Assembly: GCA_002269645.1 (NCBI GenBank)
Contig: NIVC01001275.1
Location: 186,001 to 250,000 of the forward strand
DNA from: Macrostomum lignano
Taxonomy: Eukaryota
Length of the DNA stretch: 64,000 nt
Reading direction: 5' to 3'
Part shown: one piece after another, positions 11,689-64,000 of the stretch
Position numbering within the stretch: the stretch's first letter is position 1
Layout of the letters: each line of letters opens with the position of its first letter
The notes under the pieces: generated by a model
What the model was told of the DNA's origin: nothing
What the model saw: only the letters and a program-made list of their open reading frames with translations
Database searches by the model: none
Translations under genes and position numbers: made by a program

Positions 11689-18510
<6,822 letters not shown>

Positions 18511-18574
18511 ATAGAGACGACCCTGACGCGTTTTTACAACTGATACTGGACGCCAATCAGAGGCCTCAGGGGAA

Positions 18575-26460: not shown

Positions 26461-26557
26461 GGAACAGCTAAAGCTGACCGAAATTGGACTCCGCAGAAAA
26501 TGAAAAGTCAAGTCCAACCAGTCAATCAATAATCAGCGAATAAAACCCCGGGCAGGC

Positions 26558-43140: not shown

Positions 43141-46100
43141 CTAGCAATCTTCGCCCCCCCCGATGGGGGACATCTGGATAGAACTTCTGTTCTCTACAAG
43201 TAAAAAAACCCCGCCAAATAGAGTCTTCACAAAGACAACAGAAAAACTGCTCAAATGAAGCGCAATGCAAAAAGAAAACATCCCAAGACAGCAAGCATCC
43301 CCCCTCCCCCCCCAGATAGCAAGCACCCCCAGATAGCAAGCACCCCTAGATAGCAAGCACCCCCCAGATAGCAAGCACCCCCAGATAGCAAGCATCCAAT
43401 TGATAGCAAGTATCTATCCTTAAATAGCAAGCATCCACCAGACAAAAAGTATATAGTGCAACATTTCCTTTTAGCTTTCTAGGGGCTCCTTTATGATTGG
43501 CATGACGCTTCTTATTACGTTTGAAAATGTCTCTCCTGTGTTTGAAATGGTGGCTATTTTATGTTTGAATTGGTGGCTTTTTAATGTTTGGCATGGTGAC
43601 TCTTTAATGTTCTACATGGTGGCTCTTTAATGTTTGACATGGAGTCACATATATGTTTCACATGGTGGCTCTTCTATGTCTAACTTGGTAGCTCTTTTAT
43701 GTTTGACATCGTGGCTCGTTAATGTTCGACATGGTGGCTCTTTAACGTTCGACATGGTGGCTCTTTAATGTTTGACATGGTGGCTCTTTACTGTTCGACA
43801 TGCTGGCTCTTTAATGTTTGACATGGTGGCTCTTTAATGTTCAACATGGTGGCTCTTTATTGTTTGACATGGTGGCTTTTTAATGTTTGACATGGTGTCT
43901 CTTTAATGCTCGACATTGTGGCTCTTTAATGTTCTACATTGTGGCTCTTTAATTTTCTACATTGTTGCTCTTTAATTTTTGACATGGTGGCTCTTTAATG
44001 TTCTACATTGTGCTCTTTACTATTTGACATTGTGGCTCTTTAATGTTCTACATTGTGGCTCTTTAATATTTGACATGGTGGCTCTTTAATGTTCAACATG
44101 GTGGCTCTTTATTGTTTGACATGATGGCTACTTAATGTTCGACATGGTGGCTCTTTAATGTTTGACATGGTGTCTCTTTAATGTTTGACATGGTGGCTCT
44201 TTAATGTTTGACATGGTGTCTCTTTAATGTTTGACATGGTGGCTCTTTAATGTTTGACATGGTGGCTCTTTAATGTTTGACATGGTGGCTACTTAATGTT
44301 CGACATGGTGGCTCTTTATTGTTCGAAATTGTGGCTTTTTAATTTTCTACATGGTGGCTCTTTAATGTTCTAAATGGTGGCTTTTTAATGCTCTACATTG
44401 TGGCTCTTTAATGCTCTACATGGTGGCTCTTTATTGTTTGACATGATGGCTCTTTAATGTTTGACATGATGGCTCTTTAATGTTTGACATTGTGGCTCTT
44501 TAGTGTTCTACATTGTGGCTCTTTATTGTTTGACATGATGGCTTTTTATTGTTTGACATCATGGCTCTTTAATGTTCTACATTGTGGCTCTTTATTGCTT
44601 GACATGGTGGCTCTTTAATGTGTGACATGGTGGCTCTTTAATGTGTGACATGGTGGCTCTTTAATGTTTGACATGGAGTCACGTATATGTTTGACATGTA
44701 GTCACGTATATGTTTGACATGGTGGCTCTTTAATGTTTGACATAGTGGCTCTTTTATGCTTGAAATGGTGGCTCTTTAATGTTCGACATGGTGGTTCTTT
44801 AATGTGTGACATGGTGGCTCTTTAATGTTTGACATGGAGTCATGTATGTTTTTGGCATGGAGTCACGTATATGCTTTACATGGTGACTCTTTAATGTTCG
44901 ACATGGTGGCTCTTTAATGTTTGACATGGAGTCACATATATGTTTGACATGTAGTCACATATATGTTTGACATAGTGGCTCTTTAATGTTTGACATAGTG
45001 GCTATTTTATGCTTGACATGGTGGCTCTTTAATTTTCGTCATGGTGGCTCTTTAATGTTCGACATGGTGGCTCTTTAATGTTTGTTATGTAGTCATGTGT
45101 ATATGTTTTACATGGTGGCTCTTTAATGTTAGACAGGGAGTCACGTATATGTTTGACATGTAGTCACGTATATGTTTGACATGGTGGCTCCCCTAGATAG
45201 CAAGCATCCCCAAGATAGCAAGCATCCCCCAGATAGCAAGCATCCCAAAGTTAGCAAGCATCCCCCAGATAGCAAGCATCCCCAAGATAGCAAGCATCCC
45301 CCAGATAGCAAGCATCCCCAAGATAGCAAGCATCCCTCAGATAGCAAGCATCCACCAGATAGCAAGCATCTCCCAGATAGCAAGCATCCCCCAGATAGCA
45401 AGCATCCCCAAGATAGATAGCATCTCCAAATAGCAAGCATCCCCAAGATAGATAGCATCCCCAAATAGCAAGCATCCACCAGACAATAAGTAGCTAGTGC
45501 GACAATTTCCTTAGCATTATAGCGGCTCCTTTAAAATTCGCTTACTTTTACGTTTGAAATTGTGTATCTTTTATGTTTAACAGGGTGGCTCTTTTATGTT
45601 ATACATTGTGGCTCTTTTATGTTATACATTGTGGCTCTTTTTTGTTCTACGCTCGTACATGGTAACTCTTTTATGTTTGACACGGTGGCTTTTCAATGTC
45701 TGACATGGTGGCTCTTCTATGTTTGACATGGGGGCTCCTTTATGTTTGACATGGCGGCTCTTCTATGTTTGACATGGGGGCTCTTCTATGTTTGACAAAG
45801 TGGCTTTTTAATGTTTGACATGGTGGCTCTATTATGTTTGACATGGTGGCTCTTTAATGTTAGACAAAGTAGCTCTTTAATGTTTGACATGATGGCTCTT
45901 TAATGATAGACATGGTGGCTCTTTAATTTTTGACATGATGGCTCTTTTATGTTTGACATGGTGGCTCTTTAATGTTTGACATGGTAGCTCTTTTATGTTC
46001 AACATGGTGGCTCTTTAATGTTCGACATGGTGGCTCTTTTATGTTCGACATGGTGTCGCTTCAATGTTTGACATGGAGTTACCTATATGTTTTACATGGT

Positions 46101-46925
46101 GGCTCTTTTATGTTCAACATGGTGGCTCTTTAATGTTTGACATGGGGTCTCTTCAATGTTTGACATGGAGTTACGTATATGTTTGACATGGTGGCTCTTT
46201 AATGTTTTACATGTAGTCACGTATATGTTTGACATGGTAGCTCTTTTATGTTTGACATGTAGTCACGTATATGTTTGACATGGTGGCTCTTATATGTTTG
46301 ACATGGTAGCTCTTTTATGTTTGACATGGTGGCTCTTTAACGTTTCGTATTTTGTGTTTTTTAAGGTGTTTTAATAAAAAAAACATTTTTCACTACTAAG
46401 ATTCGAACCAAGGTCGCTACATTAGCATTCCAGTCTGTTTGCATCCGGCTATCTCTTTTCAATTGGAGAACATGACTTGTGGCCCTTATAATTCAATACT
46501 TACAGCAAGTCGGTTAGAGTAAAAAGTTATGACATAATCAATTTCTCAGTCAGCCAGTATCAGTCTCAATTTAAGTTAGCAATAGGGTTACGCAATTTCA
46601 ATCAAGTCTTGTGTGCGTTTCTGTGGCACTGTTTTCACCTTGTTGTGATGCAATCTTTATCACAATCGGAATTGAGCCAGTCAGTTTTTTCTCTAGCATT
46701 CTTACAATGCATTTCAAGTCGAAAATTTGGCTTGACCTTTGCAAAAAAGCATGTTTTTCGAATATTTAATCCCTTTAACATTGAGCAATTTCTTAGCCAA
46801 GATGCATGTACCGTGCCAGGAAAATTTCTGATCGAATGGTGCAAGTTTGAAGAAAATCGGTTGAGCCAATTTTTCTGAAATCTATCGCATAGCTACAGAC
46901 ATTTCATTTTTAGTATATAGGAGGA
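43141..46925 (-). mobile_element. non-autonomous Helitron (3.8 kb) with internal satellite arrays
   Basis: Minus strand reads A|TCCTCCTATATACTAAAA at the 5' end (46925) and CTAG|T at the 3' end (43144-43141). A ccccc-gat-ggggg hairpin lies 12 nt from the end, and the insertion is between A and T with no TSD. Confidence 0.78.
43270..46335. repeat. two tandem modules, each an 18-bp array (agatagcaagcatccccc) followed by a 23-bp array (tttaatgtttgacatggtggctc)
   Basis: 18-mer blocks at 43270-43440 and 45190-45480; 23-mer blocks at 43540-45190 and 45570-46335. Confidence 0.92.
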
Positions 46926-47448
46926 TGCTTAGTAGTAAACCCGAAGGGTGAAGACGCTTTGGTGAAAAGTTGTTTTTTACAAAAAATTCTATAGTTTTTC
47001 CCACAGCCATTTTTATGCGCAATATGTTATTCTATCACTATGCCAATGGCATCAATATGCCAATAATAAATGAATAACCAATTTTACAACATTTTTTCAA
47101 TCAATTATTAATCAATTAAACGCATTAGAAGCATTATAGGCCCTAAAGTCTCTAAAAAGTCGCAAAAGAAGTGCTTGGCAGATAGAAAATGCATGCCTAT
47201 CTACTATCACCTATGGCTATAAACCCAGTGAGCTATAAACTTGGCAAAATGACACAAAATTTGGCAAACAAAAATGCATTGAAAATTTTCGTGTATTCTT
47301 TGGCCTAGCAAGCATTGCAACTCTGTTCAATAGAAGCCATTCCCATTTTTTCACCAGTAGGGCCTATTATTAAATAATTGATAAAACAAGGGTGGGGGTT
47401 AATTTTACTAAGTAATAATAGGCCTAGTTCCCAGTGAGCTCCGCGAAA

Positions 47449-47497
47449 CCCACAAACCCAAGGACACGCGCGAAGCGCGTGTCCTTGGGTTTGTGGG
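47449..47497. other. perfect 23-bp-stem palindrome with GAA loop (GCGAAGC apex); second 9-bp-stem GCGAAGC hairpin at 47555-47575
   Basis: cccacaaacccaaggacacgcgc-gaa-gcgcgtgtccttgggtttgtggg. Confidence 0.95.
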
Positions 47498-49756
47498 GTG
47501 AGCGGAGCGAACGCGCGAGGCACAAAGTGCCGAGCATGAGGAACAAACAGCCAGCCAATGCGCGAAGCGCATTGGGTGGTCTGGCTTGTGACGAATATAA
47601 TAATATGAGACGTGTGCATCGAAAAAATGACAAGAAAAATCTCACAAAAACTGCTGTAACTTCAAAACTACAAGTGCGAATTTCACAAGTGAGGTGTCAT
47701 TTTAAAGAGAAGAATCTGATCTATTTAACGAGTATAGTTTTGTATGGATTCACTGCGGAGAAAAGGAACAGGCTTCAGTTGAAATGTTTGTCTTAAGATT
47801 ATGTCTTTACAAAAGTGCATTTCCTCATGCACATTAAAACTCGAGCTAAAAATGTTCGAGGGTTATAGGTGCGCCTTACTAAGATGCATAACATTATTGG
47901 GTTGTTTTTTTCAATTGTATCAAAAAGTTGGCACTTTGGTTGCAAAAAATGCAAAAATTGAAAATGTACTTTTACAGTTTTTTGCATTTTTTTCTATACT
48001 GCTAATAGTTAAGCATACATACTATGCACCAATTGATGCGCAATTCAAAGATACACAAGTGTGGAAGTTTTCAATTCTTAAACATTTGAAATCAGAAAGT
48101 TATCGACGAAAGACTAAAAATCATGATCTCAAACTGATTTGAGGAAAAGTGCTCATTATAATTTTTGGAATATGGAAGAAACAATTCAACGCCGTCATCT
48201 AATTCCAAACTAACTGTACTTTAAGGTACTGCGATGATTTTTTTATTGAAAGAGCGAAACCTGTTTAAATATTTGAAAAAATGGAAAAAAAGTACCTTTT
48301 TTCATAGAAATACACTCTTTTGACTGCTTAATCCGATTTCCAACAACAAAATAGTTGCTTTCCTGCTGGTGCAAACCGTTATTAGGGTGAATTTTCAAAA
48401 TTGCATACTGTGCCAAAAGTAAACTGAAGCTTAATATTTATAAACATTAGAAACGGGACCACTAATGGGTATTTTACTTTGGTTACTTACTATGGACTAA
48501 ACTGGCACTGGCAGAGACAGATTTGAGAGAAACTAATTGCTCCATTGTATTTGTATTTGGCTCCAGCGTTACAAATTACAATAGCTATTTCGGGGTCTAA
48601 CCGGCTAAGTTATCAAAAAAGCTAGATACCAATCACCAGTTTCATCATCAGCTATACCTACCACGATTTTATAGTCACATGCAACAGTAATACCCTCCTT
48701 TAAAAGTTTTCAATATCTAAAATGATGTGTTAAATTTTATAAAATTTCATAAACAGTGAAATTTTAGCTGTTTACGTGCTGGTGGTTTGAACGTAGCTAC
48801 TTTGTGCGAAAATACACTGTCATTAATACCGTACCTATTATTGTATTTATTGTATTGAAAGTTGATGTGTAAATTGTACTTTTCTATTTTTTTGTCATTC
48901 GTTATCGCACTCGGGCCGGCCTGCCTGCCTTGTGGGGTGTGGTGGCCTTGGCCACTTTCTCCCCCTTCTGCTAGGATCCAAAGCAAGCTTTCAAGTGTAC
49001 ATTTAATATTATCGATCGATTATTTAAAACAAGCCTCTAGTGGCTGGTGTTGAGAGTGAGTGGCCTTGAGTGTACGCGAAAGCAAGAGGAAGCCCATGGG
49101 CGGACTATATGAACCTTCCTTTAGTGGAAAGTTGGGCCTTGTACATTGGATAGTGTACGCTACACAAGACAGAAGGTAAAGAAAAAGAGAACGACAGGCT
49201 AGCCAATAGCGATAGCATGTGCTTCTTTCTCTCCAGTCCACTATGGTAGGGGGGGGAGGGGGTGTCAGACGGCCCAACTCTAACCCCCATACCCAAAACA
49301 GCGTACATGTAGAATAAGAAGGGATTGGGTCCAGATAAGTCTTCCCAAATGTACATGTATGTACAAAGACAAACACAGACAAGAAAAATGGCTCTAAAAA
49401 CCATTGTTATTGTTACACTGTGTGTCTATTTTTATTAACTTGACTTTGACTTGTCTTTACTCTAGCATGGTCAAGGATAATTACTGTTACTTCATACCTA
49501 ATTTACAATTAATTGCATAAGATTAAGAAGGAATAATACAATCGAGGTCGAACCCATGATCACTTGACCCACCCACCCATGATCACTTCTGATTCTGACC
49601 TACATGTATCTACTATATCCTGCCAGTTTCTCCAGTTTTATGGGTCTTGGTGTCGGTGATTCGAGCAATTCCATTACATTTTATCGGTGCAGTGCGTCTA
49701 TTAATGCTTAGCTACTTGTATATGTGTTGCAGAACTTATGCTCGTAGTTTCCCTTC

Positions 49757-50538
49757 TAGGGATGTTGACCCCGGGAGTGCTCCCCGGGGAGCTTGTCGGG
49801 GAATACTCTCCGGGGAATTTAACCGGGGACCCTGGGGAGAAAAAATATGAAAAAATGCATTTGTAACTTAATTTTTGCCATTAAAATAAGAAACTGATTC
49901 ACAGAAAGCTGATTGAAACTCTGTCTATGCTCTTTTACCGCATAATTGCTTATTTCAATGCATTACATGTATAATTTGAAACACAACACACGTTTGATTG
50001 TTTTTTCACTAATAAGTCATTCAATCAAGCAAATTGCACGTAGAAAAGAAACCCGTCAGGAAAAAGAAGCCTTACTGACTAGTGACTGCTGTGCTGGTCT
50101 GCGTTGACGGCTTGACGCAGGCGCAGCGCTGCGTCATGCGTCAGGCACTGACGCATAGGGGGGTGTCATACATATACTCCCTATTAGACAAGGACAAAAT
50201 GGTGATTTACATATATATGCAAGAAATAAAATTCCGATTATAAAAACAGTCTCATTCATTAATTATCCTCTCACGAGCGTAGCTGTTTAGCATGCATTCC
50301 AACAAATGCACTTTTCCGATAAAGGTGCGCGCACGATTTCGTGATGCCACATTGTCAAATACAGTTTAAAAAAACATTGTTTAAAATTTTTACCCCTGCG
50401 CCTTGAACATGTAGTACAAAGCTTAAATCAAAGTTTAAAAAATTCCACTTACAATTTAAGTGATCCGCCGTTTTTACTTATTTTTTCTTTTCACCGGGGT
50501 CCCCGATAAGATAATTCCCTGGGGAATCGACATCCCTA
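49757..50538. mobile_element. hAT-type MITE (~780 bp)
   Basis: TIRs are TAGGGATGTTGA / TCGACATCCCTA (Ac-like TAGGGATG) with ccgggg subterminal repeats. ttcccttc occurs on both flanks (49749-49756 and 50540-50547, offset by 1 nt), consistent with an 8-bp TSD. Confidence 0.72.
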
Positions 50539-51370
50539 ATTCCCTTCCTATAAATCATTTGACGTTAGAGACATTTTACAACTCTCGCCCTACTTTATCT
50601 ATTAGGCTAACTTTATGTATGACACGACGCAAAATATTAGGAGCATCAGCGTTAATAATGCCTTGAAAGTCTTTAAATAATCGATACAACACTAGGTATT
50701 ATAAAATTCCAACCCCAAAGCTCACTGGGGCGAAAAGACTTTGTCTTCATTAACTAGTAATAAAGACATTGTTATTGGTAGTATAATTATTAGATAGGCC
50801 TAGGCCTAGGCCTAGTATTAGCAAGTAGAAAGACCATAGTCTGAATCATGCTAGGCTAGGTGCATGCCTGAACAAAAGTTGAATAGTTACAATGCACACA
50901 AAAAAGTTGAGTGCATAGCCATATTCTCAAAGCTAGACTAGAGCCTAGTGCCCAGGCCCCAAGTAGGCCCCTATTGTGTCAATAAATAACCTTTTTTGCA
51001 TTGCAACAGTAAATGTTACATAAATGACCCTTTTTTATGCTAATAATTTGGTTGATTATTCATCTTTTTTGTTTATACTATATATAGCCAAAAATCAACA
51101 TATAAACATTTGTTTAAACACCTTATTTGTTATTATAAGTTTTTCAAAGTAGAAAGCTTAAAATTTATGCTTTAAAATCTACTTTTCCATGTTTTTCTAT
51201 TTTTTTCCACTTAACATTAACTTTTCTGCATGATTCTATCAAGTGCATACTAGGTATGCATACACATTATTTTTTAGGGTAATAGCAATACCTAACTTTT
51301 GGTATACAAGGCAAATGCATGCCAAAATTTTTGTGCATATACTACATGATCCAGAGTTTGGCAGGACAAA

Positions 51371-53291
51371 TCTCTACATATAAAAATCAAAACTTTGTCT
51401 GTCTGTCTGTCTGTGTGTGGACAATTTTGATCGCTATGGACTCCCAAACCGCTCAACCAAATTACACCAAACTTTACACCCACCCTAAACTTACTACGGA
51501 GAATGTCTTAGGCTACCTTTTAATTTCCTAAATTTGAGTCTTCCTACCTAAAAGTACAAAAAAACTGCTCAAAATGCGCGATTTTTTCACTTAATCCTCC
51601 ATAGCGCCGCTCCACTTCTACCGATTCTCTTCAAATTTGACACAGGCAATTTTCAACTATTTTGACACAATCGTGTAAAATTTCAAATCTCAAAGTTAAT
51701 CCTGAAAGCCGCTGTGCACTTTTAAAGTTTGGCTGTTTTTTTCAGCGTAGCAACCACCCCAACCTCCACCCGCCTGCCTCTCTTTCCCGATCCCGATCTG
51801 GGCCCAGATGTGTAAAAGGGTTTCAAAATTGACTAACTTTCAGCTGCCATAAGTTTGCTCCACGTAAAGCGATTGACTTCAAACTTGACACAATTCTTCA
51901 TTGACTCATTCTCTGTCTAAATGTAAAGTTTCAACTCTGTAACTCAACCGAAAAAGAAACTGTAAGCATGTGAAGTTTGTCTGCTTTTTCTGTTGTTTGT
52001 GCCACTCACTCACTCATTGCCCCAGAGCCAGACGAAGGGTCAGGCGATAGGACTGAATGTACATAGCAAATGTACAGTGTTTTGGATTAACTTTATTTAT
52101 AGCCTTCTCTGCACCCCGAGAGTGGAGAGGCTACGTTTAGCCATAACAGTTTAGTGAGAAATTCTAACCACTGCCCTCCCCTCTGTATTGGCAAACTCTG
52201 CAGCAGTTTAACAGTGGATGGCAATTGGCAAATCGAGGGAATCCAGCATGGTTTGTAAAAGCTAAAGATTTATGAAAAGGCGATGTGATGCAATGCAATA
52301 CAACCCTACTAAATTAGGCACACCAGGGAAATTTTAGGTTTCTTTTAAAGGTACTATGTAAATTTTAAATGGCCTCCTAAGAAATGCGTATTTCCTTGGT
52401 TTTTAGACTGATGCAGACTGCAGTGGAGCTGAAGATACACAAATTCCTTTCAGGACTGCAAATTAGCAAGAAAGATGACGTGATCCAAGCATGAGAACAA
52501 CCATGAGTGTACTACGTCCCACAAACTGGCTTTCCAAGCAGGGATGGGCAGACTTTTACCTCAAAGGCCAGATAAAGAATCCAGCTCATAGCTAAGGGGC
52601 AGATGAAAGTGGAAAGAAGAAGGAATAGACGATTCGAAGAGAGGAGAGGCGACAGAGGGGATAAAAGAAAAGATAAAAGATAATAGGAGAGATGAGGGGG
52701 TGAGGACGATGAGAGAGAGGGGAGAGAGGAAAAGCGAGAGGAGAGAGTAGAGATGAGAGAACAGAGAGCTGCAGATGAGAGGAGAGAGGAGACAGCAGAG
52801 AGGAGAGCAGAGAGGAAACAGGTGAAAGAAGAGATGAGAGAGTAAAGGGAAGAGAGAAGAGATAAAGATACATCTCTACATCTCTAAGGTTCTAGAGATG
52901 AGAGAGATGGAAGGAGAGATAAGAGATAACAGAGAGAGGAGAGTGGAGTGAGAGAAGAGAGGGAGACAGAGTATAGAAAAGGGAAGAGAAGAGAAAAGAA
53001 GAAAGGAGAAAGGAAAGTGAGGAGTCAAAAGAGGGGAAAGAAAAGAGTACAGAGGAGAGAGGTGAGAGAACATATAAGACAGAGATGCCAGATTAAAGAG
53101 GGGGGATGAGAGAGCAGAGACGAGAGTGAACAGATAAAAGATGGGAGAGTAGAGAGAACAGAGGAGAGGTTACAGAGACGAGAGGAGAGAGGAGAGACAA
53201 AGGTAGAGAAGTGAGTGAGGAGAGAGGAGCGGAAAGAGGAGAATGGAGAGGGGAGAGGGGAGAGAGAGAAGGAGAGATAAGAGAGAAAGAC

Positions 53292-53369
<78 letters not shown>

Positions 53370-53932
53370 GGGAGCAGAGAGAAATGAGAAGAGATAAAAG
53401 ATAAAAAAAGAGAAAGGAATGATAAGAGAGCAAAGACGAGAGAGAAAAGAGGTGAGGGAAGAGACGAGAGAAGAGGGGAGAGATGAGAGAGGAGAGGGGG
53501 AGAGAGGAGAAAGGAGAGGAGAGAGAAACGAAGAGACAAGAGATGAGATAAGAGAGATGAAAGAGAAGAGAGATAAGGGAAGATACGAGAGGAGAGAGGA
53601 GAGAGGAGAGACGAGGGACAAGAGAGATGAGAGGAAACAAAGAGACGATAGAAGGATCCAAGGGACGTAGGGAGAGTCAGGGAGAGACCAGAGTTTAGCA
53701 GTATATGTTTTAGAGACAGACAGACATTGCCTGACATTCTGCGCAGTACCCCAGCCAACAATGTCTCAAACCCTAATTTTAGACGAATGTGCTCCATTTT
53801 ATGTCTACCTCTATCCTACTAACTATTAACAAGTTTTTGTTTGTGTATGGCCTTAGATTTCAGAATACATGCAAAAGTAGTTCCGGGTATTGGAATTCCT
53901 CGGGTTCAAAATCCGCGGGTTTCAACAGCTTG
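51371..53932 (+). mobile_element. non-autonomous Helitron with (TGTC)n near the 5' end, a GA-rich core and a CTTG 3' end
   Basis: 5' end A|TCTCTACATATAAAAATC. 3' end ccgggtattggaattcctcgg hairpin ...caacagCTTG|T. Homology with the inverted copy stops exactly at CTTG|T. Confidence 0.7.
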
Positions 53933-55379
53933 TTAATTATAAAGAATTAATAAAGTTAAAAATGTTATATTACTTTTACTAAATAATAGTATTTTTAGCA
54001 TTAAAATAGCAATAAAATTAAAAGATATAATTAAAAATAAAATAGCATTAAAATGGTAACCAGAATAAACAAATGAAAATAAAAAAAGGTTACAAATGAC
54101 TTTCAATTTTTGGGATATATGCAAGCATATCCTAGAACCATGATACCTATGAGTTGGCTAGTCTAGTCATATTAAAGCTACAAAAAGCAGCTATGCAATA
54201 GTATTACTATCTTGATTACATATTTAGCTATCATTGAGGCATTACCCAACCATTGTCTATCAACTATTTGTGACCAGGTTAGCAAAATTCACTCATTTCC
54301 CTAAGTTACATTGGTGTAGATAAATCAAGTGACTAGAATTATATATATGCATGTAATGAAACCTTTGTAAGATAAAAAACAATGCAAGAAAAAGTAACAT
54401 TGATGCTGGCAAGTGCCAAACTGGCTAACTATAGGTATTAGTATAAAACAATTTGAAGCATGCAGCTCTATTTTGCTTTTGCATTTAATTTCTATAGGAA
54501 TAAAACATTCTCCATATGCAGAAGCAAATGGTACAAGCATGAAGAAGCTAGAGATGAAGTATATGTGTAGTATATCCTATATATCATACTGAAATTCAAA
54601 CCTTACTACATTATACCTTTCCCTATAATACATATTTACCTAAAGTCTACAAGTACTTTAAAATGCACTGCCAATAAAACACAATAGAGATACTTGCAAT
54701 AATTGCTAAGTAGAATAATAATTTATTTTGGAAGCAAATAGAAGTCACAAATTTTCTTTGCGACATGCTTCTTATCACTGTACAAATTGTAGCCGTAGCA
54801 TATAGCTTAGTTATTGGATGTCTAATATTAGCCTTGAACCAATGATAGTTGGAACCAATGATAGGGACAAACTCTACTACTGAATACTAACTACAAAAGT
54901 GAGAAAAAGGGCTTATTAGAATGCAATAAACACAGCCTTTCTGTCCTCTCTCCCTTTCTCTTTGTCCTTAATCTCTTTAATTTAAGTTTCTCTTTAATTG
55001 TCCTATATCCTCATGCTTCTTATATGGCATCTTTACTTCTCTTTCTCTATTATTTAAGAAATATTTAAAATTCAAAATTAAAATTGATTTGATTTTTTTA
55101 ATTTAAAACCTGATTGCTAGGTGGCTTGCAGTATGTTATACACCTGCTGGCCATCTCTTAAAATGCATGTTTGATATAATATAGTGCAAAATTTAAAACT
55201 GGCCCCTATCCTATCCCTTTCAATTATTAAATCAACAGCTCCAATGGAAAAAGTCTTACTAAAATATTACTAGATATGGAAAGTATATGTTCCTTTCATA
55301 TGCTTTGTCTAAAAAACCTTTATATCTATAACTTCTCATAGCCATATCTATAGCTACAGTGGAACTCTAATGCGTGACC

Positions 55380-55600
55380 TTGGCCTTGGTAGGATATAAC
55401 AAATAATGACAGTAGCATGGTAGAGGCAGCTATGTGATCAGGCATAGCTACCCAGCCTACCATCAAACACTTTGTTGAACCACATTCTGCCATGTCCAGC
55501 ACCTATTGACCAAGTCAAAAGGCACCTTGTCCTTGATAGAACTTCATGTCATCAATTTTGCAATTTATGCCAGCTAGATTGACTGGGTTAACCAACAGTT
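55380..55600 (-). pseudogene. decayed Merlin/ISXO2-like DDE transposase fragment
   Basis: Minus frame KIDDMKF..QG..GQ*VLDMAECGSTKCLMV..V..PDH resembles the family pattern IDESKF..RG..GQWVFG.VERGS.K...V.DR. Confidence 0.5.
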
Positions 55601-56164
55601 ATGCATGTATATTTGGATATGTATGCATGCATGTATATGCTCATGCATTTAGCATACTGGAAGCATTAATCATAATAAATATAATAATGGGTATAAATTG
55701 CTAGATAAATAGGAGATGCCACTTTTATTCACCTTTGCTTTTGGCAAGGCATCAATACCCTAATTTATATAGTAATGTAACTACTAATATTAGTAGTATT
55801 ACTACTACTGCACTAACTTGCCCAAAGCCACTGGAAATTGAACAAACTACCAGTATAAGCTAAAAGCTGAGTTCTCTGACATCACTAAGGCCTGGCTTTC
55901 TAGATCTTTGCATTAATTCATATTCTCAAATGTAGTATAAGAATATACATATTTTTCTAAAGCATCAGGTTGAAGAATTCTAACTCCCAGCAAAAGTTCG
56001 ATAACTTAGAGATAAGTATGTTACATTTAGAAGCGTGTATAAAAAACTAAGGTTTTAACAGTCCCCGCTGTTATTGTGCTTTATTTTGTGTGAATATGTT
56101 ATCACACGAAGAGAAATCAGTTGGAATTTAGCGAATTAAAACAAAAACACACTGCAGCTGCGCA

Positions 56165-58181
56165 ATGTCGGACAAGTGCTGCTATTTAGTGGAGTTCGAT
56201 TACAAAGCCGACCAGGAGGACGAGCTCTCCATAGTCAAAGGCGAGCTGCTGTACGACGCCGAGCCGGAGGAGGACGGCTGGCTTCGCGGCCGGAACTCGG
56301 CGGGCAGGCGCGGCCTGTTCCCTGACAATTTTGTTAAACCGTGCCGCCTGGCCACCCTGCGCCGGGTTGACCCGAAGCTGCGCGCCTCCGGCTTGGAGGC
56401 CAATTCGGCTGTCTATGCGATGGAGCCGCTGCCAGCTGCCGGATCCGCCGCTGTGGCGACCGTCTACGTGCCCAAGCTGGCCGCCAAGTTTCCCGTCCCG
56501 CTGGCCTATCTGGACATTGACGGCGGGGGTGGCCAGCCGCCGCACGAGCAGCAGCAGCTGCCGTCGCGCCCCCTGCCCGGGATGGCGCCCACCAGCGCAG
56601 TCAGGCAGCACCAGCCGAAGCCTGCGCAGTCGGCGACTGCTGGCGGTTCAGCATCGGCCTCGCTGTCTGATAAGGCCAAGCTGCAGATGCACTCGGACTA
56701 TGTGAAGGTTAGGGAGGCTGGGTTGGAGTGGCTCGGGTATTGGGGCACAGATCCCAATTACAGACACCCAGATCCCAATTACAGACACCCAGATCCCAGT
56801 TACAGACACCCAAATCCCAGTTACAGACACCCAGATTCCAATTACAGACACCAAGATCCCAATTACAGACACCCAGATTCCAATTACAGACACCCAGATC
56901 CCAATTTCAGACACCCAGATCCCAATTACAGACACCCAGATCCCAATTACAGACACCGAGATCCCAATTACAGACACCGAGATCCCAATTACATACACCC
57001 AGATCCCAATTACAGAAGCCCGGGTCCCGAATCCATAAAAATATCCCCATTCACAATCCCTATTTCCATGGCAACGCAGGTGATCCACGCCTACACGGCC
57101 CAGCACCAGGACGAGCTGACCCTCCACATCGGCGACGTGATCCGCGTCACCAACCGCAACCTCAGCGACGACGGCTGGTGGCAGGGCGAGCTGCACGGCC
57201 AGGTCGGCGTGTTCCCCGACAACTTTGTTGAGCCCTGCTCCGCCTCGGCTGCCGCGCCTGCCCGACAGGCCGCCTCCTCGACTGCCGCCGCCGCGCCGGC
57301 CCGGCCGCCTGTCAGCGCCGCCGCCCGGCACCAGAACTCGTCCGGCGGGCTGGACTCCGCCGCTGCACACGCCGGCAGCAACGGCCTGCTGGCTGGCGAC
57401 CACCCGCAGCGGCAGCCGCTGGCCGACGCGGCAGCTGGCAGGCCGCGGCCGGTGGCCGGCAAGAGGCCGCCAAACGGAGCCAATCACAGGGGCCCAGTGA
57501 GTGTCCTACTGGGGATGGGAATCCCAAAGTGTAGGGTATTGGAATCCTACAGTGTAGGGTATGGGAATCCCACAGTGTAGGGTATGGGAATCCCACAGTG
57601 TAGTATGGGAATCCCACAGTATAGGGTATGGGAATCCCACAGTGTAGGGTATGGGAATCCCACAGTGTAGTATGGGAATCCCACAGTATAGGGTATGGGA
57701 ATCCCACAGTGTAGTATGGGAATCCCACAGTTGTAGGGTATGGGAATCCCACAGTGTAGGGTATGGGAATCCCACAGTGTAAAACACGGTAAAGCCAAAT
57801 CCAGGTGACCGCTGGTTGCTAAGGCCCGCATAGCAACTGAGCAGCAATCCATTGAACGCCCCGCAGCATCTGGAAGAGGAGGCCAGCCGCACCGAGAGCT
57901 CCCAGCTGACCACGGCCGCCACGTCTTACAGCGCGGCTGGCGGGTCCGGTCAGCAGCAGCCGGAGACGCTCGCTGAACTGCTTCAGGAGGTGCAGCGCCT
58001 TCGCTCGGAGGCGGCCCAGCGCGACCGGGAGATCCTGGAGCTGAGCAGGTTCAAGCGCACGGCTGTTGACAACATCGCGGGCCTGAAAGAGGAGATCGAC
58101 AATATTAAGAAGAGCTTTCACGCCTGCTGCGTGGACATGGACCGGGTGAAGCGGGAGCTGGCCAGCCTCAGCAGTATCTGA
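56165..58181 (+). CDS. CD2AP/CIN85(SH3KBP1)-like adaptor: two SH3 domains, Pro/Ala-rich linker, C-terminal coiled coil; exons 56165-56707, 57080-57496, 57867-58181 (~424 aa)
   Basis: SH3-1 VEFDYKADQEDELSI...DGWLRG...GLFPDNFVK and SH3-2 DYVK|VIHAYTAQHQDELTL...DGWWQGELHGQVGVFPDNFVE carry the PDNFV signature of this family. Both introns are GT-AG phase 0. The last exon encodes a heptad coiled coil. Confidence 0.85.
56745..57015. repeat. intronic minisatellite, 21-bp unit acagacacccagatcccaatt
   Basis: About 12-13 copies in SH3-gene intron 1. Confidence 0.92.
57510..57780. repeat. intronic minisatellite, ~21-23-bp unit gggtatgggaatcccacagtgta
   Basis: About 11 copies in SH3-gene intron 2. Confidence 0.9.
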
Positions 58182-58411
58182 ATAGGACCGGGTGAAGCGG
58201 GAGCTGGCCAGCCTCAGCAGTATCTGAATAGGACCGGGTGAAGCGGGAGCTGGCCAGCCTCAGCAGTATCTGAATAGGACCGGGTGCAGCGGGAGCTGGC
58301 CAGCCTCAGCAGTATCTGAATAGGACCGGGTGAAGCGGGAGCTGGCCAGCCTCAGCAGTATCTGAATAGGACCGGGTGAAGCGGGAGCTGGCCAGCCTCA
58401 GCAGTATCTGA
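58139..58411 (+). repeat. 46-bp tandem repeat made of the last codons and stop of the SH3 gene
   Basis: ggaccgggtgaagcgggagctggccagcctcagcagtatctgaata occurs 6 times, starting at 58139, 58185, 58231, 58277, 58323 and 58369. Confidence 0.95.
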
Positions 58412-58793
58412 GCAAATGATAAAGGAATCTGATATTGAACAGACATTCACATGAAGTTCATTTGCAATGCACACCACACACCGATTCTGTCAGTTTTTAC
58501 CATTTTTTTACTTTGTGAGACCCAAGATTAATTATAGTCATTGCTTCACGAGTATTAGGAATTTACAAGCCGCCCGCAATTCACAAGTAACAAGGGAATT
58601 CGCATAGTGCATTTTTCTAATTCACCATTTGAGTTGAATGATGTAGCTCGTACATCAACAATCTAATTAGCTTCCTGTGAATTTTCTTCATAATGAATGA
58701 ATTTATATATGCAGCTGTAACATTATTTGTCATTAATTACTAGTAGTGTTCACAACACAAGTTTCGTGAATTTTGTATTTTTTACCATTGGTA

Positions 58794-59450
58794 CAAGCTG
58801 TTGAAACCCGCGGATTTTGAACCCGGGGAATTCCAATCCCCGGAACTATTTTTGCATGTATTCTGAAATCTAAGGCCATAAACAAACAAAAACTTGTTAA
58901 TAGTTCGTAGGATAGAGGTAGACATAAAATGGAGCGCATTCGTGTAAAATTAGGGTCTGAGACATTGTTGGCTGGGGTACTGCGCAGAATGTCAGGCAAT
59001 GTCTGTCTGACTCTAAAACATATATTGCTAAACTCTGGTCTCTCCCTGACTCTCCCTACGTCCCTTGGATCTTTTAAAATTTCTATCATCTCTTTGTTTC
59101 CTCTCATCTCTCTTGTCCCTCATCTCTCCTCTCTCCTCTCTCCCCTCTTCTCTCGTATCTTCCCTCATCTCTCTTCTCTTTCATCTCTCTTATCTCATCT
59201 CTTGTCTCTTCTTTTCTCTCTCCTCTCCTCTCTCCCCCTCTCCTCTCTCCTCTCACCCCCTCTTCTCTCTTATCTTCCTTCTCCTTTCTATTCTTTTCTC
59301 TCTTCTCTTAACTCTCTCCTCTACTCTCTCATCTCTCCCCTCTTCTCTCGTCTCTTCCCACACCTCTTTTCTCTCTCGTCTTTGCTCTCTCATCTTTCCT
59401 TTCTCTTCTTTTATCTTTTCTCTCCTATCTCTTCTCATTTCTCTCTGCTC

Positions 59451-59535
<85 letters not shown>

Positions 59536-60761
59536 TATCTCTCCTCCTCTCTCTACTCTCTCCCCTCTCCATTCTCCTCTTTCCTCTCCTCTCTCCTCTC
59601 ATCTCTGTAACCTCTCCTCTGTTCTCTCTACTCTCCCATCTTTTATCTGTTCACTCTCGTCTCTGCTCTCTCACCCCCCTCTTTAATCTGGAATCTCTGT
59701 CTTATATGTTCTCTCACCTCTCTCCTCTGTACTCTTTTCTTCCCCCTCTTTTGACTCCTCACTTTCCTTTCTCCTTTCTTCTTTTCTCTTCTCTTCCCTT
59801 TTCTATACTCTGTCTCCCTCTCTTCTCTCACTCCACTCTCCTCTCTCCGTTATCTCTCATCTCTCATTTCTCATCTCTCCTTCCACATCTCTCATCTCTA
59901 CAACCTTAGAGATGTAGAGATGTATCTTTATCTCTTCTCTCTTCCCTTTACTCTCTCATCTCTTCTTTCACCTGTTTCCTCTCTGCTCTCCTCTCTGCTG
60001 TCTCCTCTCTCCTCTCATCTGCAGCTCTCTGCTCTCTCCTGGCCCATCTCTCTTTCTCCTCTAATCTCTCCCCTGTTTCCTCTCCTCTCTCGTCCTTTCT
60101 CCTCTTTCCCCGTCCTCTCGGTTCTCTCCCCTCTCCTCCTCTCTCCTCACTCACTTCTCTCTCCCTTGTCTCCCCTCTCATCTCTTATTTCTATCCTTTT
60201 TTCTCTCCACTCTCCCATCTCTCGTCTGTTCACTCTCGTCTCTGGTCTCTCATCTCCCCTCTCTCATCTGCCATCTTTACTCTCTTATACTCGTATGTTT
60301 TCTCACCTCTCTCATCTGTACTCTTCTCTTCCCCTCTTTTGACTCCTCTTTTTCCTTTCTCCTTTTTCCCTTCTCTTCTCTTCCCTCTTCTATTCTCTCC
60401 CTCTCTTGTCTTCTCTCTTCTCTCTTCACTCTCCTCTCTCCTCTCATATTTCGCGTTCACTCTCATCTTTGCTCTCTACCCCCACTCTCTTCTGTCATCT
60501 TTACTCTCCACTCTCCTGTGTACACTTCTCTTTCCCCTCTACTGAATCCTCTCTTCTTACTCCTCTTCTCTTCCCTCTTCTATACTCTCTCCCCTCTATT
60601 CTCTTCTCTTGTCTCTGCACTCTGCTCTCTCTTCCTTCATCTCTCATCTCTACTCTCTCATCTTTCCTTTCATCTCTCTCATCTCCACAATCTCATCTAT
60701 TTCCTCTCTCCTCTTCTTCCCTTTACTCTATCATCTCTCCTTTCTCCTCTCTTCTTTCTCA

Positions 60762-60832
<71 letters not shown>

Positions 60833-61767
60833 TTTTATCTTCTCTCTTCTCACTCCTCTCTACCTCTCTCTCCCCTCCTATCTCCTCTCTGTTCTCTATT
60901 CTCTTCTCACTCTTCTCTACTCTCCTCTCTCATCGATCCTCTGTCTCATCTCTCCCCTCTTCTCTCTTCCTCTTCTCTCCTCTACTCTTTCCTCTCCCTC
61001 CTGTCTCCCCTCCTCCTCCCATATTCTCTGCTCTCTCCTCGTCCTCACCCCACTCGTCTCTCCTGTTATCTTAATATATTCTCTCTTACCCCCCTCTCGC
61101 CCTTCCTCTCTTTCTAATAGTCTATTCATTTTCTTTTTCACTCTCATCTGGCCCGCAGCCATGAGTTGGATTCTTTATCTGGCCTTGAGTTAAAAATCTA
61201 CCGATCCCTGCTTCGAAAGCCAGTTTGTGGGACGGTACTATCATGGTTATCATTTCTCATGCTTTAATCACGTCACCTTTCTGGCCAATTAGCAGCCCTG
61301 AGAGGAATTTGTGTATCTCCAGCTCCACCACCACAGTCTGCACTCTGCAGCAGTCTAACAACCAAGGAAATACGCATTTCTTAGGAGTCATTTAAATTTT
61401 AAAGTTACCCTATGCGAAACTTAATGTTAAAAGCTTCATGGTGTAACTAATTTAGTAGGATTGCATTGTAATCAGTTATTCATTAATTTTTCGATATTTT
61501 TACAAACCATCCCACATCGCCTTGGTTTGCCATCCTTGTTTAACTGCTGCAGACTTGTCTATTCAGAGGACAGTGGTTTGAAATTGAATCTCTCGCTAAA
61601 CTCTCTCCTCTCCACGCCTCTCCACTCGCGGGGGTACAGAGAAGGCTATTAAAAAGTTATTCCAAAACACTGTACATTCGCTATGTACATTCAGTTCTTT
61701 CGCCTGACCCTTCGTCTGAGCTGGGGGAATGAGTGAGTGAGCGGCACAAACAACAGAAAAAGCAGAC
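58794..61767 (-). mobile_element. 5'-truncated inverted copy of the 51371-53932 Helitron, with an expanded CT-rich core
   Basis: Reverse complement aligns by eye to 51977-53932 with many substitutions and ends in CTTG|T at 58794. Confidence 0.75.
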
Positions 61768-62021
61768 GAATCCATAAAAATATCCCCATTCACAATCCCT
61801 ATTTCCATGGCAACGCAGGTGATCCACGCCTACACGGCCCAGCACCAGGACGAGCTGACCCTCCACATCGGCGACGTGATCCGCGTCACCAACCGCAACC
61901 TCAGCGACGACGGCTGGTGGCAGGGCGAGCTGCACGGCCAGGTCGGCGTGTTCCCCGACAACTTTGTTGAGCCCTGCTCCGCCTCGGCTGCCGCGCCTGC
62001 CCGACAGGCCGCCTCCTCGAC
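61768..62021 (+). other. duplicated fragment of the SH3 gene (intron-1 3' end plus the SH3-2 part of exon 2)
   Basis: Identical as far as read to 57029-57282 (offset 4739). Gives an 82-aa ORF at 61807-62055. Confidence 0.93.
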
Positions 62022-63396
62022 ACGCGAAGCGCGTGTCCTTGGGTTTGTGGGGTGAGCGGAGCGAACGCGCGAGGCACAAAGTGCCGAGCATGAGGAACAA
62101 ACAGCCAGCCAATGCGCGAAGCGCATTGGGTGGTCTGGCTTGTGACGAATATAATAATATGAGACGTGTGCATCGAAAAAATGACAAGAAAAATCTCACA
62201 AAAACTGCTGTAACTTCAAAACTACAAGTGCGAATTTCACAAGTGAGGTGTCATTTTAAAGAGAAGAATCTGATCTATTTAACGAGTATAGTTTTGTATG
62301 GATTCACTGCGGAGAAAAGGAACAGGCTTCAGTTGAAATGTTTGTCTTAAGATTATGTCTTTACAAAAGTGCATTTCCTCATGCACATTAAAACTCGAGC
62401 TAAAAATGTTCGAGGGTTATAGGTGCGCCTTACTAAGATGCATAACATTATTGGGTTGTTTTTTTCAATTGTATCAAAAAGTTGGCACTTTGGTTGCAAA
62501 AAATGCAAAAATTGAAAATGTACTTTTACAGTTTTTTGCATTTTTTTCTATACTGCTAATAGTTAAGCATACATACTATGCACCAATTGATGCGCAATTC
62601 AAAGATACACAAGTGTGGAAGTTTTCAATTCTTAAACATTTGAAATCAGAAAGTTATCGACGAAAGACTAAAAATCATGATCTCAAACTGATTTGAGGAA
62701 AAGTGCTCATTATAATTTTTGGAATATGGAAGAAACAATTCAACGCCGTCATCTAATTCCAAACTAACTGTACTTTAAGGTACTGCGATGATTTTTTTAT
62801 TGAAAGAGCGAAACCTGTTTAAATATTTGAAAAAATGGAAAAAAAGTACCTTTTTTCATAGAAATACACTCTTTTGACTGCTTAATCCGATTTCCAACAA
62901 CAAAATAGTTGCTTTCCTGCTGGTGCAAACCGTTATTAGGGTGAATTTTCAAAATTGCATACTGTGCCAAAAGTAAACTGAAGCTTAATATTTATAAACA
63001 TTAGAAACGGGACCACTAATGGGTATTTTACTTTGGTTACTTACTATGGACTAAACTGGCACTGGCAGAGACAGATTTGAGAGAAACTAATTGCTCCATT
63101 GTATTTGTATTTGGCTCCAGCGTTACAAATTACAATAGCTATTTCGGGGTCTAACCGGCTAAGTTATCAAAAAAGCTAGATACCAATCACCAGTTTCATC
63201 ATCAGCTATACCTACCACGATTTTATAGTCACATGCAACAGTAATACCCTCCTTTAAAAGTTTTCAATATCTAAAATGATGTGTTAAATTTTATAAAATT
63301 TCATAAACAGTGAAATTTTAGCTGTTTACGTGCTGGTGGTTTGAACGTAGCTACTTTGTGCGAAAATACACTGTCATTAATACCGTACCTATTATT
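62020..63396 (+). repeat. direct duplication of 47466-48842
   Basis: Constant offset of 14554. The ORF-track translations are identical (47799/62353, 47801/62355). The left breakpoint lies in the 47449-47497 palindrome. Confidence 0.93.
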
Positions 63397-64000
63397 CTCT
63401 CTCTCTTGCTTCCCCTCTCTCTCTCTCTGCTCCCCCTCTCTCTCTGCTTTCTCTCTCTGTCCCCCTCTCTCTCTGCTTCCCCCCCTCTCTCTCTGCTTCC
63501 CCCCTCTCTCTCTCTGCTTCTCTCTCTCTGCTTCCCCCCTCTCTCTCTGCCCCCCCTCTCTCTCTGCTTCCCCCCTCTCTCTGCTTCCCCTCTCTCTCTC
63601 GCTCTTCTCTCTGCTTCTCTCTCTCTCTCTGCTTCCCCCTCTCTCTCTGCCCCCTCTCTCTCTGCTTCCCCCTCTCTCTCTCTGCCCCCCTCTCTCTCTC
63701 TGCTCTCTCTCTCTGCTCCCTCTCTCTCTGCTGCTTCTCTCTCTCTCTCTGCTTCCCCTCTCTCTCTCTGCTTCCCCCTCTCTCTCTCTCTCTGCTTCCC
63801 CTCTCTCTCTCTCTGCTTCCCCCCTCTCTCTCTGCTTACCCCTCTCTCTCTGCTTCCCCCTCTCTCTCTCTCTGCTTCCCCCTTCTCTCTCTCTGCTTCC
63901 CCCTCTCTCTCTCTGCTTCCCCCCTCTCTCTCTGCTTCCCCCCTCTCTCTGCTTCCCCCCTCTCTCTCTGCTTCCCCCCTCTCTCTTATCTCTCCTCTCC
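63397..64000. repeat. pyrimidine-rich microsatellite-derived repeat (ctctctctctgcttcccc)n
   Basis: Visible periodic CT/C-run pattern to the window end. Confidence 0.9.

What the first reader, a model, noticed from the sequence alone, without database searches (positions are those of the whole stretch)
61700..63396. Three-part chimera: Helitron + captured SH3 exon + palindrome-broken segment, creating a stand-alone SH3 micro-ORF
At 61767/61768 the inverted Helitron is cut and joined to a copy of 57029-57282, with 1-bp microhomology. At ~62019-62021 this joins a copy of 47466-48842 through a GAC microhomology inside the GCGAAGC palindrome. The two copied pieces look identical to sources 4.7 and 14.6 kb away, whereas the Helitron arms are clearly diverged, so the event is very recent. 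The result is an 82-aa ORF (61807-62055, MATQVIHAY...PDNFVEPC...GFVG*): essentially one SH3 domain using the formerly intronic ATG, a potential dominant-negative microprotein. It looks like local template switching or Helitron-associated exon capture caught in the act. Misassembly is the main alternative.
Basis: partly seen in the sequence, partly recalled or inferred. Interest (0 to 1): 0.75.

Follow-up and report, generated by a model that had tools for sequence, protein, structure and literature searches.

The report
SH3 exon copied into a Helitron
In a flatworm (Macrostomum lignano) contig, two nearby DNA pieces, one of them a splice-ready SH3-domain exon, were very recently copy-pasted side by side into a cluster of rolling-circle (Helitron-like) transposon fragments; this is a clean but ordinary example of how such elements pick up gene fragments, and it still needs confirmation from sequencing reads.

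Summary
Window 61767-62021 is a 255/255 copy of 57028-57282. Window 62020-63396 is a 1376/1377 copy of 47466-48842. The flanking repeat is cut at 61767. The window is M. lignano contig NIVC01001275.1:186001-250000 (Mlig_3_7).

The repeat behaves as a non-autonomous Helitron. A paralogous locus has a precise empty site, there is no target-site duplication, it inserts at A^T, and it has a 5'-TC end. Its 3' end is CTTG, not CTRR, and its hairpin is weak. Both copied pieces therefore sit inside a 7.2-kb composite Helitron with intact termini.

The junctions have 1-3 bp microhomology. One lies a few bases past the apex of a 71-bp palindrome that is intact in the source.

The best explanation is serial template switching (filler-DNA or MMBIR-like) that copied local sequence. 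Misassembly is unlikely but not excluded, because no reads were available.

The 82-aa SH3 ORF exists. However, the copied exon keeps its splice acceptor, and GenBank already annotates it as the last exon of a 260-aa two-SH3 protein (PAA69985.1). That model is genome-guided. The "stand-alone microprotein" reading is not supported.

This is a new example of a known process, of moderate interest.

The parts
47438..47508 (.). Near-perfect 71-bp palindrome with 34-nt arms and a GAA loop inside a GCGAAGC motif. It is intact in the source. B' begins a few bases from its centre.
   Evidence: DNA fold -62.7 kcal/mol, z -12.9
47466..48842 (+). Source B: AT-rich non-coding DNA, with no protein or RNA family match.
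51371..53932 (+). Full-length (2562 bp) non-autonomous Helitron-like element. Layout: 5' TCTCTAC..., about 1.35 kb unique, about 0.9 kb GA/CT-rich satellite, 280 bp unique, ...CAACAGCTTG 3'. It is flanked by host A and T.
56165..58181 (+). CIN85/CD2AP-like two-SH3 gene copy with exons 56165-56707, 57080-57496 and 57867-58181, all phase 0. Homology to the parental loci L001-L003 runs only from 56110 to 58183.
57028..57282 (+). Source A: the last 52 nt of intron 1, including the acceptor and an in-frame ATG at 57068, plus the first 203 nt of exon 2 (the whole second SH3 domain).
58794..60043 (-). P1: the 3' part of a young-subfamily Helitron (3' terminus at 58794, 280 bp unique, the whole satellite). 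It is collinear with the left and L003 copies up to about 60043.
60044..61767 (-). P2: an internal fragment of an older Helitron subfamily (satellite plus a 740-bp unique part, about 80% identical to the others). It is truncated at 61767 (junction J1).
61767..62021 (+). A': a 255/255 copy of source A. The splice acceptor AG is at 61817-61818.
61807..62055 (+). 82-aa ORF: one SH3 domain plus 10 new residues, REARVLGFVG. Positions 61819-62055 form the terminal coding exon of the GenBank model PAA69985.1.
62020..63396 (+). B': a 1376/1377 copy of source B. It starts just past the palindrome apex (junction J2) and ends against a CT-rich array (junction J3).
63397..64000 (-). CT-rich array of 21-bp units. 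It is the start of P5, the 5' part of a young-subfamily Helitron. P5 continues past the window to its 5'-TC end at window-equivalent 65989 (L004 19828).

Best explanation
This is most likely a real, very recent, local copy-paste rearrangement. While DNA was being synthesised through a cluster of partial non-autonomous Helitron copies just downstream of an SH3 adaptor gene, the growing strand left its template several times. It re-primed on nearby sequence through 1-3 bp of microhomology. This is serial template switching: the "filler DNA" route of Helitron gene capture, mechanistically the same as MMBIR/FoSTeS or synthesis-dependent end joining.

Two templated pieces were written in. B' came from 14.6 kb upstream and A' from 4.7 kb upstream. 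Both sources were left intact.

Read along the Helitron's sense strand (leftwards in the window), every exit point lies at structure-prone DNA:
- the CT-rich satellite (P5 to B);
- a few bases past the apex of a 71-bp palindrome, with slippage of one CG unit (B to A);
- the edge of a 21-bp minisatellite (A to P2);
- the satellite again (P2 to P1).

The product is a 7.2-kb composite. It has a bona fide Helitron 5' end and 3' end, and it now carries a splice-competent copy of the exon encoding the gene's second SH3 domain, in the gene's own orientation, 3.6 kb past its stop codon.

Shown: the copies, the junctions, the microhomologies, the intact sources, Helitron-type insertion behaviour, and the position inside intact termini.

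Inferred: the direction and order of the switches, whether it was one event or several, any role of a Helitron Rep/helicase, and any expression.
For: - The copies are essentially identical to intact local sources.
- B' is truncated at both ends while source B is continuous, so copying ran from B to B'. A lies in a gene with three parental paralogues, and A' matches the window's A at 255/255 but L001-L003 at only 98.4%.
- Junction microhomology is 1 bp at J1 and GAC at J2.
- J2 lies in a very stable palindrome. A's left end is 12 bp from the 21-bp minisatellite at 56748-57016. J3 and J0 lie in the CT satellite.
- Helitron behaviour: an empty site in L001 against a filled site in L002/L003, and A|TC...CTTG|T flanks with no target-site duplication at three independent sites.
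- A' and B' lie between the 3' end at 58794 and the 5' end at window-equivalent 65989.
- Internal capture with short junction homologies is what the filler-DNA model predicts. End-bypass capture would place fragments at the 3' end (PMC6544945).
- Artefact routes fit poorly. Random library chimeras would not join three pieces from within 15 kb of a 764-Mb genome. An assembler or polisher needs sequence similarity to switch copies, and there is none across J1 or J2. This rests on reasoning from the methods described in PMC5730564.
Against: - No read-level or second-assembly evidence was available.
- Exact-protein look-ups of three junction-spanning ORFs found nothing.
- The GenBank gene model that uses J2 comes from a genome-guided transcriptome with multimapping reads. 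It is therefore not independent of the assembly.
- Microhomologies of 1-3 bp are weak evidence on their own.
- The source of P2 is unknown. P1 and P5 overlap in their satellite parts at only about 74% identity. The history may therefore involve several events of different ages, and a single synthesis run is only one possible reading.
- No autonomous Helitron was examined.
Confidence: 0.62

Rival explanations
1. Assembly artefact. The Canu (PacBio CLR), Pilon and SSPACE assembly joined or invented these junctions in a very repeat-rich region, and no single molecule carries J1-J3.
For: - The region is dense in low-complexity CT satellite and minisatellites.
- Mlig_3_7 is a CLR assembly polished with Illumina DNA and RNA-seq reads, and it has 180-312 Mb of redundancy.
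- The perfect identity of the copies is what a duplication artefact would also show.
- No independent sequence contains the junction ORFs.
Against: - J1 and J2 lie in unique sequence with only 1-3 bp of shared bases, so overlap-based assembly or polishing has no reason to jump there.
- Three pieces all come from within 15 kb and all in the same orientation, which is not the pattern of random ligation chimeras.
- A' includes intron sequence, so it is not an RNA-seq polishing insert.
- The composite ends in proper Helitron termini with A and T flanks.
Confidence: 0.15
2. Capture dependent on the Helitron Rep/helicase. The composite was built during rolling-circle transposition and inserted here as one 7.2-kb unit at an A^T site. 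It is a chimeric transposition that joined parts of two or three donor Helitrons with host DNA. It was not formed in situ by host replication or repair.
For: - The composite has intact 5'-TC and 3' termini flanked by host A and T.
- All pieces are arranged co-linearly on the Helitron sense strand.
- The switches between Helitron bodies lie in the shared satellite.
- Chimeric and fragment-carrying Helitrons are well documented (PMC6544945).
Against: - A' and B' match sequences only 4.7 and 14.6 kb away at 99.9-100%, whereas P1, P2 and P5 match no local copy better than 97%.
- A unit insertion would require the donor complex to have sampled exactly this neighbourhood.
- There is no evidence of other copies of the composite or of an active autonomous element. 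Neither could be tested here.
Confidence: 0.15
3. Cut-and-ligate repair. Physical fragments, released for example by breakage at the extruded palindrome on a sister chromatid, were ligated into a double-strand break by end joining, without templated synthesis.
For: One end of B' lies at the palindrome centre, where hairpin or cruciform cleavage is expected. Junction homology is minimal.
Against: - Both sources are intact on the same contig.
- Two separate fragments would each have to be excised from a sister chromatid and captured together.
- The breakpoint is a few bases past the apex and includes a CG slippage, which fits polymerase dissociation better than hairpin-tip nicking.
Confidence: 0.05

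Closest known systems
Helitron gene-fragment capture by the filler-DNA model (internal capture during break repair or template switching)
   Same: - The fragments are internal to an element bounded by Helitron-type 5' and 3' ends.
- Several unrelated host pieces lie side by side.
- The junctions have short homologies and the donor loci are identifiable.
- The captured piece is an exon with part of its intron, so capture was at the DNA level.
   Different: - The donors lie in cis, only 4.7 and 14.6 kb away, and are still 99.9-100% identical.
- Only one copy is known, so there is no evidence the composite has been mobilised.
- The element's 3' end is CTTG rather than CTRR, and its 3' hairpin is weak.
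- The acceptor is a compound of three partial Helitron bodies.
MMBIR/FoSTeS and synthesis-dependent microhomology-mediated end joining (templated insertions)
   Same: - Serial copying of nearby segments.
- Sources retained.
- Junction microhomology of 1-3 bp.
- Breakpoints at non-B DNA: a palindrome, a polypurine/polypyrimidine satellite and a minisatellite.
   Different: - These models were defined mainly from human and yeast rearrangements and Drosophila gap repair (my own knowledge).
- Here there is no experimental system, and a role for a transposon enzyme cannot be excluded.
CIN85 (SH3KBP1) / CD2AP adaptor proteins
   Same: The host gene encodes N-terminal SH3 domains, a Pro/Ala-rich linker and a C-terminal coiled-coil-like tail. 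Its best named homologues are SH3KBP1 and CD2AP. The SH3 domains match SH3_9, SH3_1 and SH3_2.
   Different: - The flatworm protein has two SH3 domains, not three.
- The annotated chimeric product (260 aa) and the 82-aa ORF both lack the C-terminal half.
- Splicing exon 2 to A' would give a three-SH3 protein, but nothing shows that this occurs.

Membership tests
Helitron (rolling-circle transposon), non-autonomous | Insertion between host A and T without a target-site duplication, shown by an empty site | tested here: met
   The L001 empty site reads gatta^taggtc. L003 and L002 are filled. All three 5' flanks are A and all three independent 3' flanks are T.
Helitron (rolling-circle transposon), non-autonomous | 5'-TC terminus | tested here: met
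   TCTCTAC(C/A)TATAAAAATC is found at window 51371, L003 1711 and window-equivalent 65989 on the minus strand.
Helitron (rolling-circle transposon), non-autonomous | 3'-CTRR terminus | tested here: not met
   All copies end ...CAACAGCTTG, that is CTTG. This is a variant terminus, so I call the element Helitron-like.
Helitron (rolling-circle transposon), non-autonomous | A 16-20 bp palindrome or hairpin close to the 3' end | tested here: inconclusive
   An imperfect CCGGGGATTGGAATTCCCCGG palindrome lies about 30 nt from the end. Folding gives z = -2.1 for the right copy and -0.05 for the left copy.
Helitron (rolling-circle transposon), non-autonomous | No terminal inverted repeats; multiple copies at independent sites | tested here: met
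   There are three independent insertion sites in about 150 kb of sequence, plus a solo 129-bp fragment in L001-L003. The termini are not inverted repeats of each other.
Helitron (rolling-circle transposon), non-autonomous | A Rep/helicase-encoding autonomous partner in the same genome | not tested
   No whole-genome search was possible. No long ORF lies in the element.
Helitron gene capture, filler-DNA type | Captured host DNA lies internal to the element, between recognisable 5' and 3' termini | tested here: met
   A' and B' (61767-63396) lie between the 3' end at 58794 and the 5' end at window-equivalent 65989.
Helitron gene capture, filler-DNA type | Short homology between acceptor and donor at the junctions | tested here: met
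   1 bp at J1 and GAC at J2. This is weak. J3 shows none that is detectable.
Helitron gene capture, filler-DNA type | The chimeric element is later amplified (more than one copy) | not testable with these tools
   Only this contig and three paralogous loci were available. None of them carries the block.
MMBIR/FoSTeS-type templated insertion | Copied segments with intact nearby templates, microhomology and at least two consecutive switches | tested here: met
Microprotein / dominant-negative single-domain ORF | Independent transcription and translation of the short ORF | not testable with these tools
   No RNA or ribosome data were available. The ATG lies upstream of a retained splice acceptor, and the only annotation uses the exon as spliced.

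The most novel reading that the evidence does not exclude
This would be a snapshot of Helitron exon capture before any mobilisation. A single synthesis run along the Helitron sense strand was thrown off its template at a satellite, at a palindrome apex and at a minisatellite edge. It stitched a splice-competent SH3 exon into an element that still has both termini. The exon is already used as an alternative last exon, giving a coiled-coil-less two-SH3 isoform, so both the mechanism of capture and the birth of a new isoform would be visible at one locus. It would also be the first described Helitron gene capture in a flatworm.
Probability: 0.25. Interest if true: 0.6.

Novelty: new member of a known kind. 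Interest (0 to 1): 0.38.

Why it matters
How Helitrons pick up gene fragments is still argued, because most captured fragments are old and their donors are far away or diverged. At this locus both donors are still intact, in cis and about 100% identical. Every junction can therefore be read to the base, including one just past the tip of a strong palindrome.

If reads confirm it, the locus is a tidy natural example supporting template-switch (filler-DNA) capture. It also shows how an exon copy placed downstream of its own gene can offer a new terminal exon.

It is a single locus in a highly repetitive, partly redundant draft assembly, so its value is illustrative rather than field-changing.

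Tried and rejected
- I first thought the right arm ended naturally at 61767, because a two-sequence alignment stopped there. Adding the third copy from beyond the window showed that the other copies run about 600 bp further, so I rejected this.
- An inverted segmental duplication as the origin of the arms is rejected. Homology stops exactly at the Helitron termini and the flanks are unrelated.
- A simple insertion into one Helitron (P1 + P5 as two halves) is only partly tenable. The unique parts fit, at 94-98% identity, but the satellite parts overlap by at least 440 bp at about 74% identity.
- The GenBank model PAA69985.1 as independent proof of junction J2 is rejected. The transcriptome was genome-guided and allowed up to 1000 multimappers.
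- Exact-product look-ups of junction-spanning ORFs (82, 172 and 128 aa) and of two other window ORFs found nothing.
- A protein homology search with the B'-derived ORF found nothing. Pfam found nothing on the B ORFs. Rfam found nothing in the whole window.
- Gene IDs Mlig008314 and Mlig002072 were not found in the searchable literature or in one paper's supplements.
- I looked for terminal repeats or a Helitron-like end around source B. A CTAG lies 10 nt beyond the palindrome on the minus strand, but it is followed by G, not T, and there is no second copy to define ends. This was left unresolved.
Full report
**Where the window comes from**

The longest ORF across the SH3 region (56165-57580) matches Macrostomum lignano protein PAA67583.1 at 99% identity. 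Other best hits are SH3KBP1/CIN85 and CD2AP adaptors. The 90% cluster holds four GenBank proteins on four contigs of assembly Mlig_3_7, GCA_002269645.1. Locus L004 (NIVC01001275.1:232162-258055) is 100% identical to window 46162-64000. The window is therefore NIVC01001275.1:186001-250000, and L004 provides 8 kb beyond the window's right end.

**The observation**

- Self-BLAST confirms both copies. A' (61767-62021) equals A (57028-57282) at 255/255. B' (62020-63396) equals B (47466-48842) at 1376/1377.
- The single mismatch, at 62022, abuts the junction. The alternative reading is a shared GAC plus loss of one CG unit in the palindrome's CG run.
- J1 shares one base, C at 61767.
- After 63396 the sequence enters a CT-rich array of 21-bp units, whereas source B continues into unrelated AT-rich DNA.
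- Source B starts inside a 71-bp palindrome (arms 47438-47471 and 47475-47508, GAA loop). It is extremely stable as single-stranded DNA (-62.7 kcal/mol, z -12.9). The copy keeps only the right arm and a few bases beyond the loop.

**What the flanking repeat is**

- The left copy (51371-53932) and the right-hand material are inverted relative to each other.
- Three paralogous loci gave the key test. L001 has an uninterrupted site, gatta^taggtc. L003 and L002 carry a 2.7-kb insertion at exactly that point, with no target-site duplication. It reads A|TCTCTACCTATAAAAATC...CAACAGCTTG|T.
- The window copies have the same termini and the same A and T flanks, in unrelated flanking DNA.
- Insertion at A^T without duplication and a 5'-TC end are the hallmarks of Helitrons (features as summarised in PMC6544945).
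- The 3' end is CTTG rather than CTRR, and the subterminal palindrome is weak. I therefore call the element Helitron-like and non-autonomous. It has no long ORF.

**Structure of the right side**

Sequence beyond the window shows a third partial copy, P5. It runs from the CT array at 63397 to a 5'-TC end at window-equivalent 65989. K-mer chaining and alignments resolve the right side, on the minus (Helitron-sense) strand, as follows:
- P5: 5' end, 1.35 kb unique, then satellite. It is 94-97% identical to the left and L003 copies.
- B' (reverse complement).
- A' (reverse complement).
- P2: an internal fragment of an older subfamily, about 80% identical, beginning about 600 bp from where a 5' end would be. 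It really is truncated at 61767.
- P1: satellite plus 280 bp unique, ending at the 3' terminus at 58794. It is 96-97% identical to the left and L003 copies.

A' and B' therefore lie inside a 7.2-kb composite that has both Helitron termini. P1 and P5 could be two halves of one element. However, their satellite parts overlap by at least 440 bp at only about 74% identity, so the Helitron scaffold may predate the A'/B' event and may have its own history.

**Age**

A' and B' together differ from their sources at no more than 1 of 1632 positions. Young Helitron copies differ by 2-6%, P2 by about 20%, and the gene copy differs from its parental loci by 1-4%. The A'/B' event is the youngest feature of the locus.

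**Context of the "source" gene**

L001, L002 and L003 are collinear with each other for more than 9 kb on both sides of the gene. The window matches them only from 56110 (55 bp before the ATG) to 58183 (2 bp past the stop), introns included, plus Helitron sequence. The window's SH3 gene is therefore itself a dispersed 2.07-kb DNA duplicate. It lacks the parental 3' UTR. At the homology boundary the last 46 bp of coding sequence are tandemly repeated 5.9 times. The gene lies between the 3' ends of two oppositely oriented Helitrons. This suggests the locus has repeatedly acquired templated DNA, but I did not pursue it further.

**Mechanism**

- Both donors are intact and in cis, so the pieces were copied, not cut.
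- B' is truncated at both ends while B is continuous. A lies in a gene with paralogues, and A' matches the window's A better than it matches L001-L003 (255/255 against 98.4%). The direction of copying is therefore clear.
- The junctions show 1-3 bp of microhomology.
- If synthesis ran leftwards (5' to 3' on the Helitron sense strand), each departure from a template occurs at structure-prone DNA: the CT satellite, a few bases past the palindrome apex (where a nascent strand can first fold back on itself, here with slippage of one CG unit), 12 bp from a 21-bp minisatellite, and the satellite again.
- This fits serial template switching, that is, the filler-DNA model of Helitron capture. That model predicts internal fragments with short junction homologies, unlike end-bypass capture (PMC6544945). 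It equally fits MMBIR/FoSTeS-type repair (my own knowledge).
- The direction, the single-event reading and any involvement of a Helitron enzyme are inferences.

**Is it real?**

- I could not examine reads.
- Mlig_3_7 was built from PacBio CLR reads with Canu, polished with Pilon using DNA and RNA reads, and scaffolded with SSPACE (PMC5730564).
- J1 and J2 lie in unique sequence with almost no shared bases. All the pieces come from within 15 kb and in one orientation. A' contains intron sequence. None of the usual artefact routes predicts this pattern.
- I put misassembly at about 15%.
- The GenBank model that uses J2 is not independent evidence, because the transcriptome was genome-guided and kept multimapping reads.
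- Exact look-ups of junction-spanning ORFs in public assemblies found nothing.

**Coding consequence**

- The gene has three phase-0 exons: 56165-56707, 57080-57496 and 57867-58181.
- A comprises the last 52 nt of intron 1 plus 203 nt of exon 2, which is the entire second SH3 domain.
- The 82-aa ORF (61807-62055) is real and scores as a full SH3 domain. Its ATG is intronic and lies upstream of an intact acceptor.
- Exon 1 spliced to A' gives exactly the deposited 260-aa protein PAA69985.1 (BOX15_Mlig008314g1). That protein has two SH3 domains and ends ...AASSTREARVLGFVG*. It lacks the Pro/Ala-rich and coiled-coil-like C-terminal 175 residues.
- Exon 2 spliced to A' would also stay in frame and give three SH3 domains.
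- There is no AATAAA or ATTAAA within 900 bp after the normal stop. One ATTAAA lies at 62387, after the chimeric stop.
- If the copy is expressed, use as an alternative last exon is more plausible than a free-standing microprotein. Neither has been demonstrated.

**Verdict**

The functional reading is not supported. The finding is a new, unusually legible instance of a known process: gene-fragment capture by template switching in a Helitron context. It sits at a locus whose gene model is already in GenBank, and it awaits read-level confirmation.

Noticed in passing
window 58139-58411: A 46-bp unit repeated 5.9 times at 99% identity. It duplicates the last 12 codons and stop codon of the SH3 gene, exactly where homology to the parental loci ends.
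   Followed up: partly
window 56110-58183 versus L001-L003: The window's SH3 gene is an intron-containing 2.07-kb dispersed duplicate of the Mlig002072 loci, at 96-99% identity. It runs from about 55 bp before the ATG to 2 bp after the stop. Its flanks are entirely unrelated and it has no parental 3' UTR. It sits tail-to-tail between two Helitrons.
   Followed up: partly
window 56708-57079: Intron 1 is 372 nt, stop-free and in frame, so exons 1 and 2 form one 471-aa ORF. Its 21-bp minisatellite would encode DPNYRHP repeats if the intron were retained.
   Followed up: no
L001 ~2941 versus L003 1711-4407 and L002 1-410: There is a Helitron presence/absence difference between paralogous or allelic loci of the same assembly, with a precise empty site. 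This shows relatively recent activity of the family.
   Followed up: yes
window 47551-47579 (= 62105-62133); L003 17288, 17498, 21555: Further hairpins with the GCGAAGC mini-hairpin motif. One is a second hairpin 45 bp after the big palindrome in B. Others belong to an unrelated repeat of about 210 bp in L003. Their function is unknown.
   Followed up: no
window 9557-10370, 12096-12665, 15802-17894, 18570-19774, 23633-24549, 25205-26461, 33819-35318, 43273-46345: Numerous long minisatellite arrays (units of 18-200 bp, 80-98% identical). Several create long artefactual ORFs, for example 18507-19814.
   Followed up: no
window 47423-47426 (minus strand): On the minus strand the 71-bp palindrome is followed after 10 nt by CTAG, an arrangement reminiscent of a Helitron 3' end. 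The next base is G, not T, and no second copy was available to test whether B belongs to another element.
   Followed up: partly
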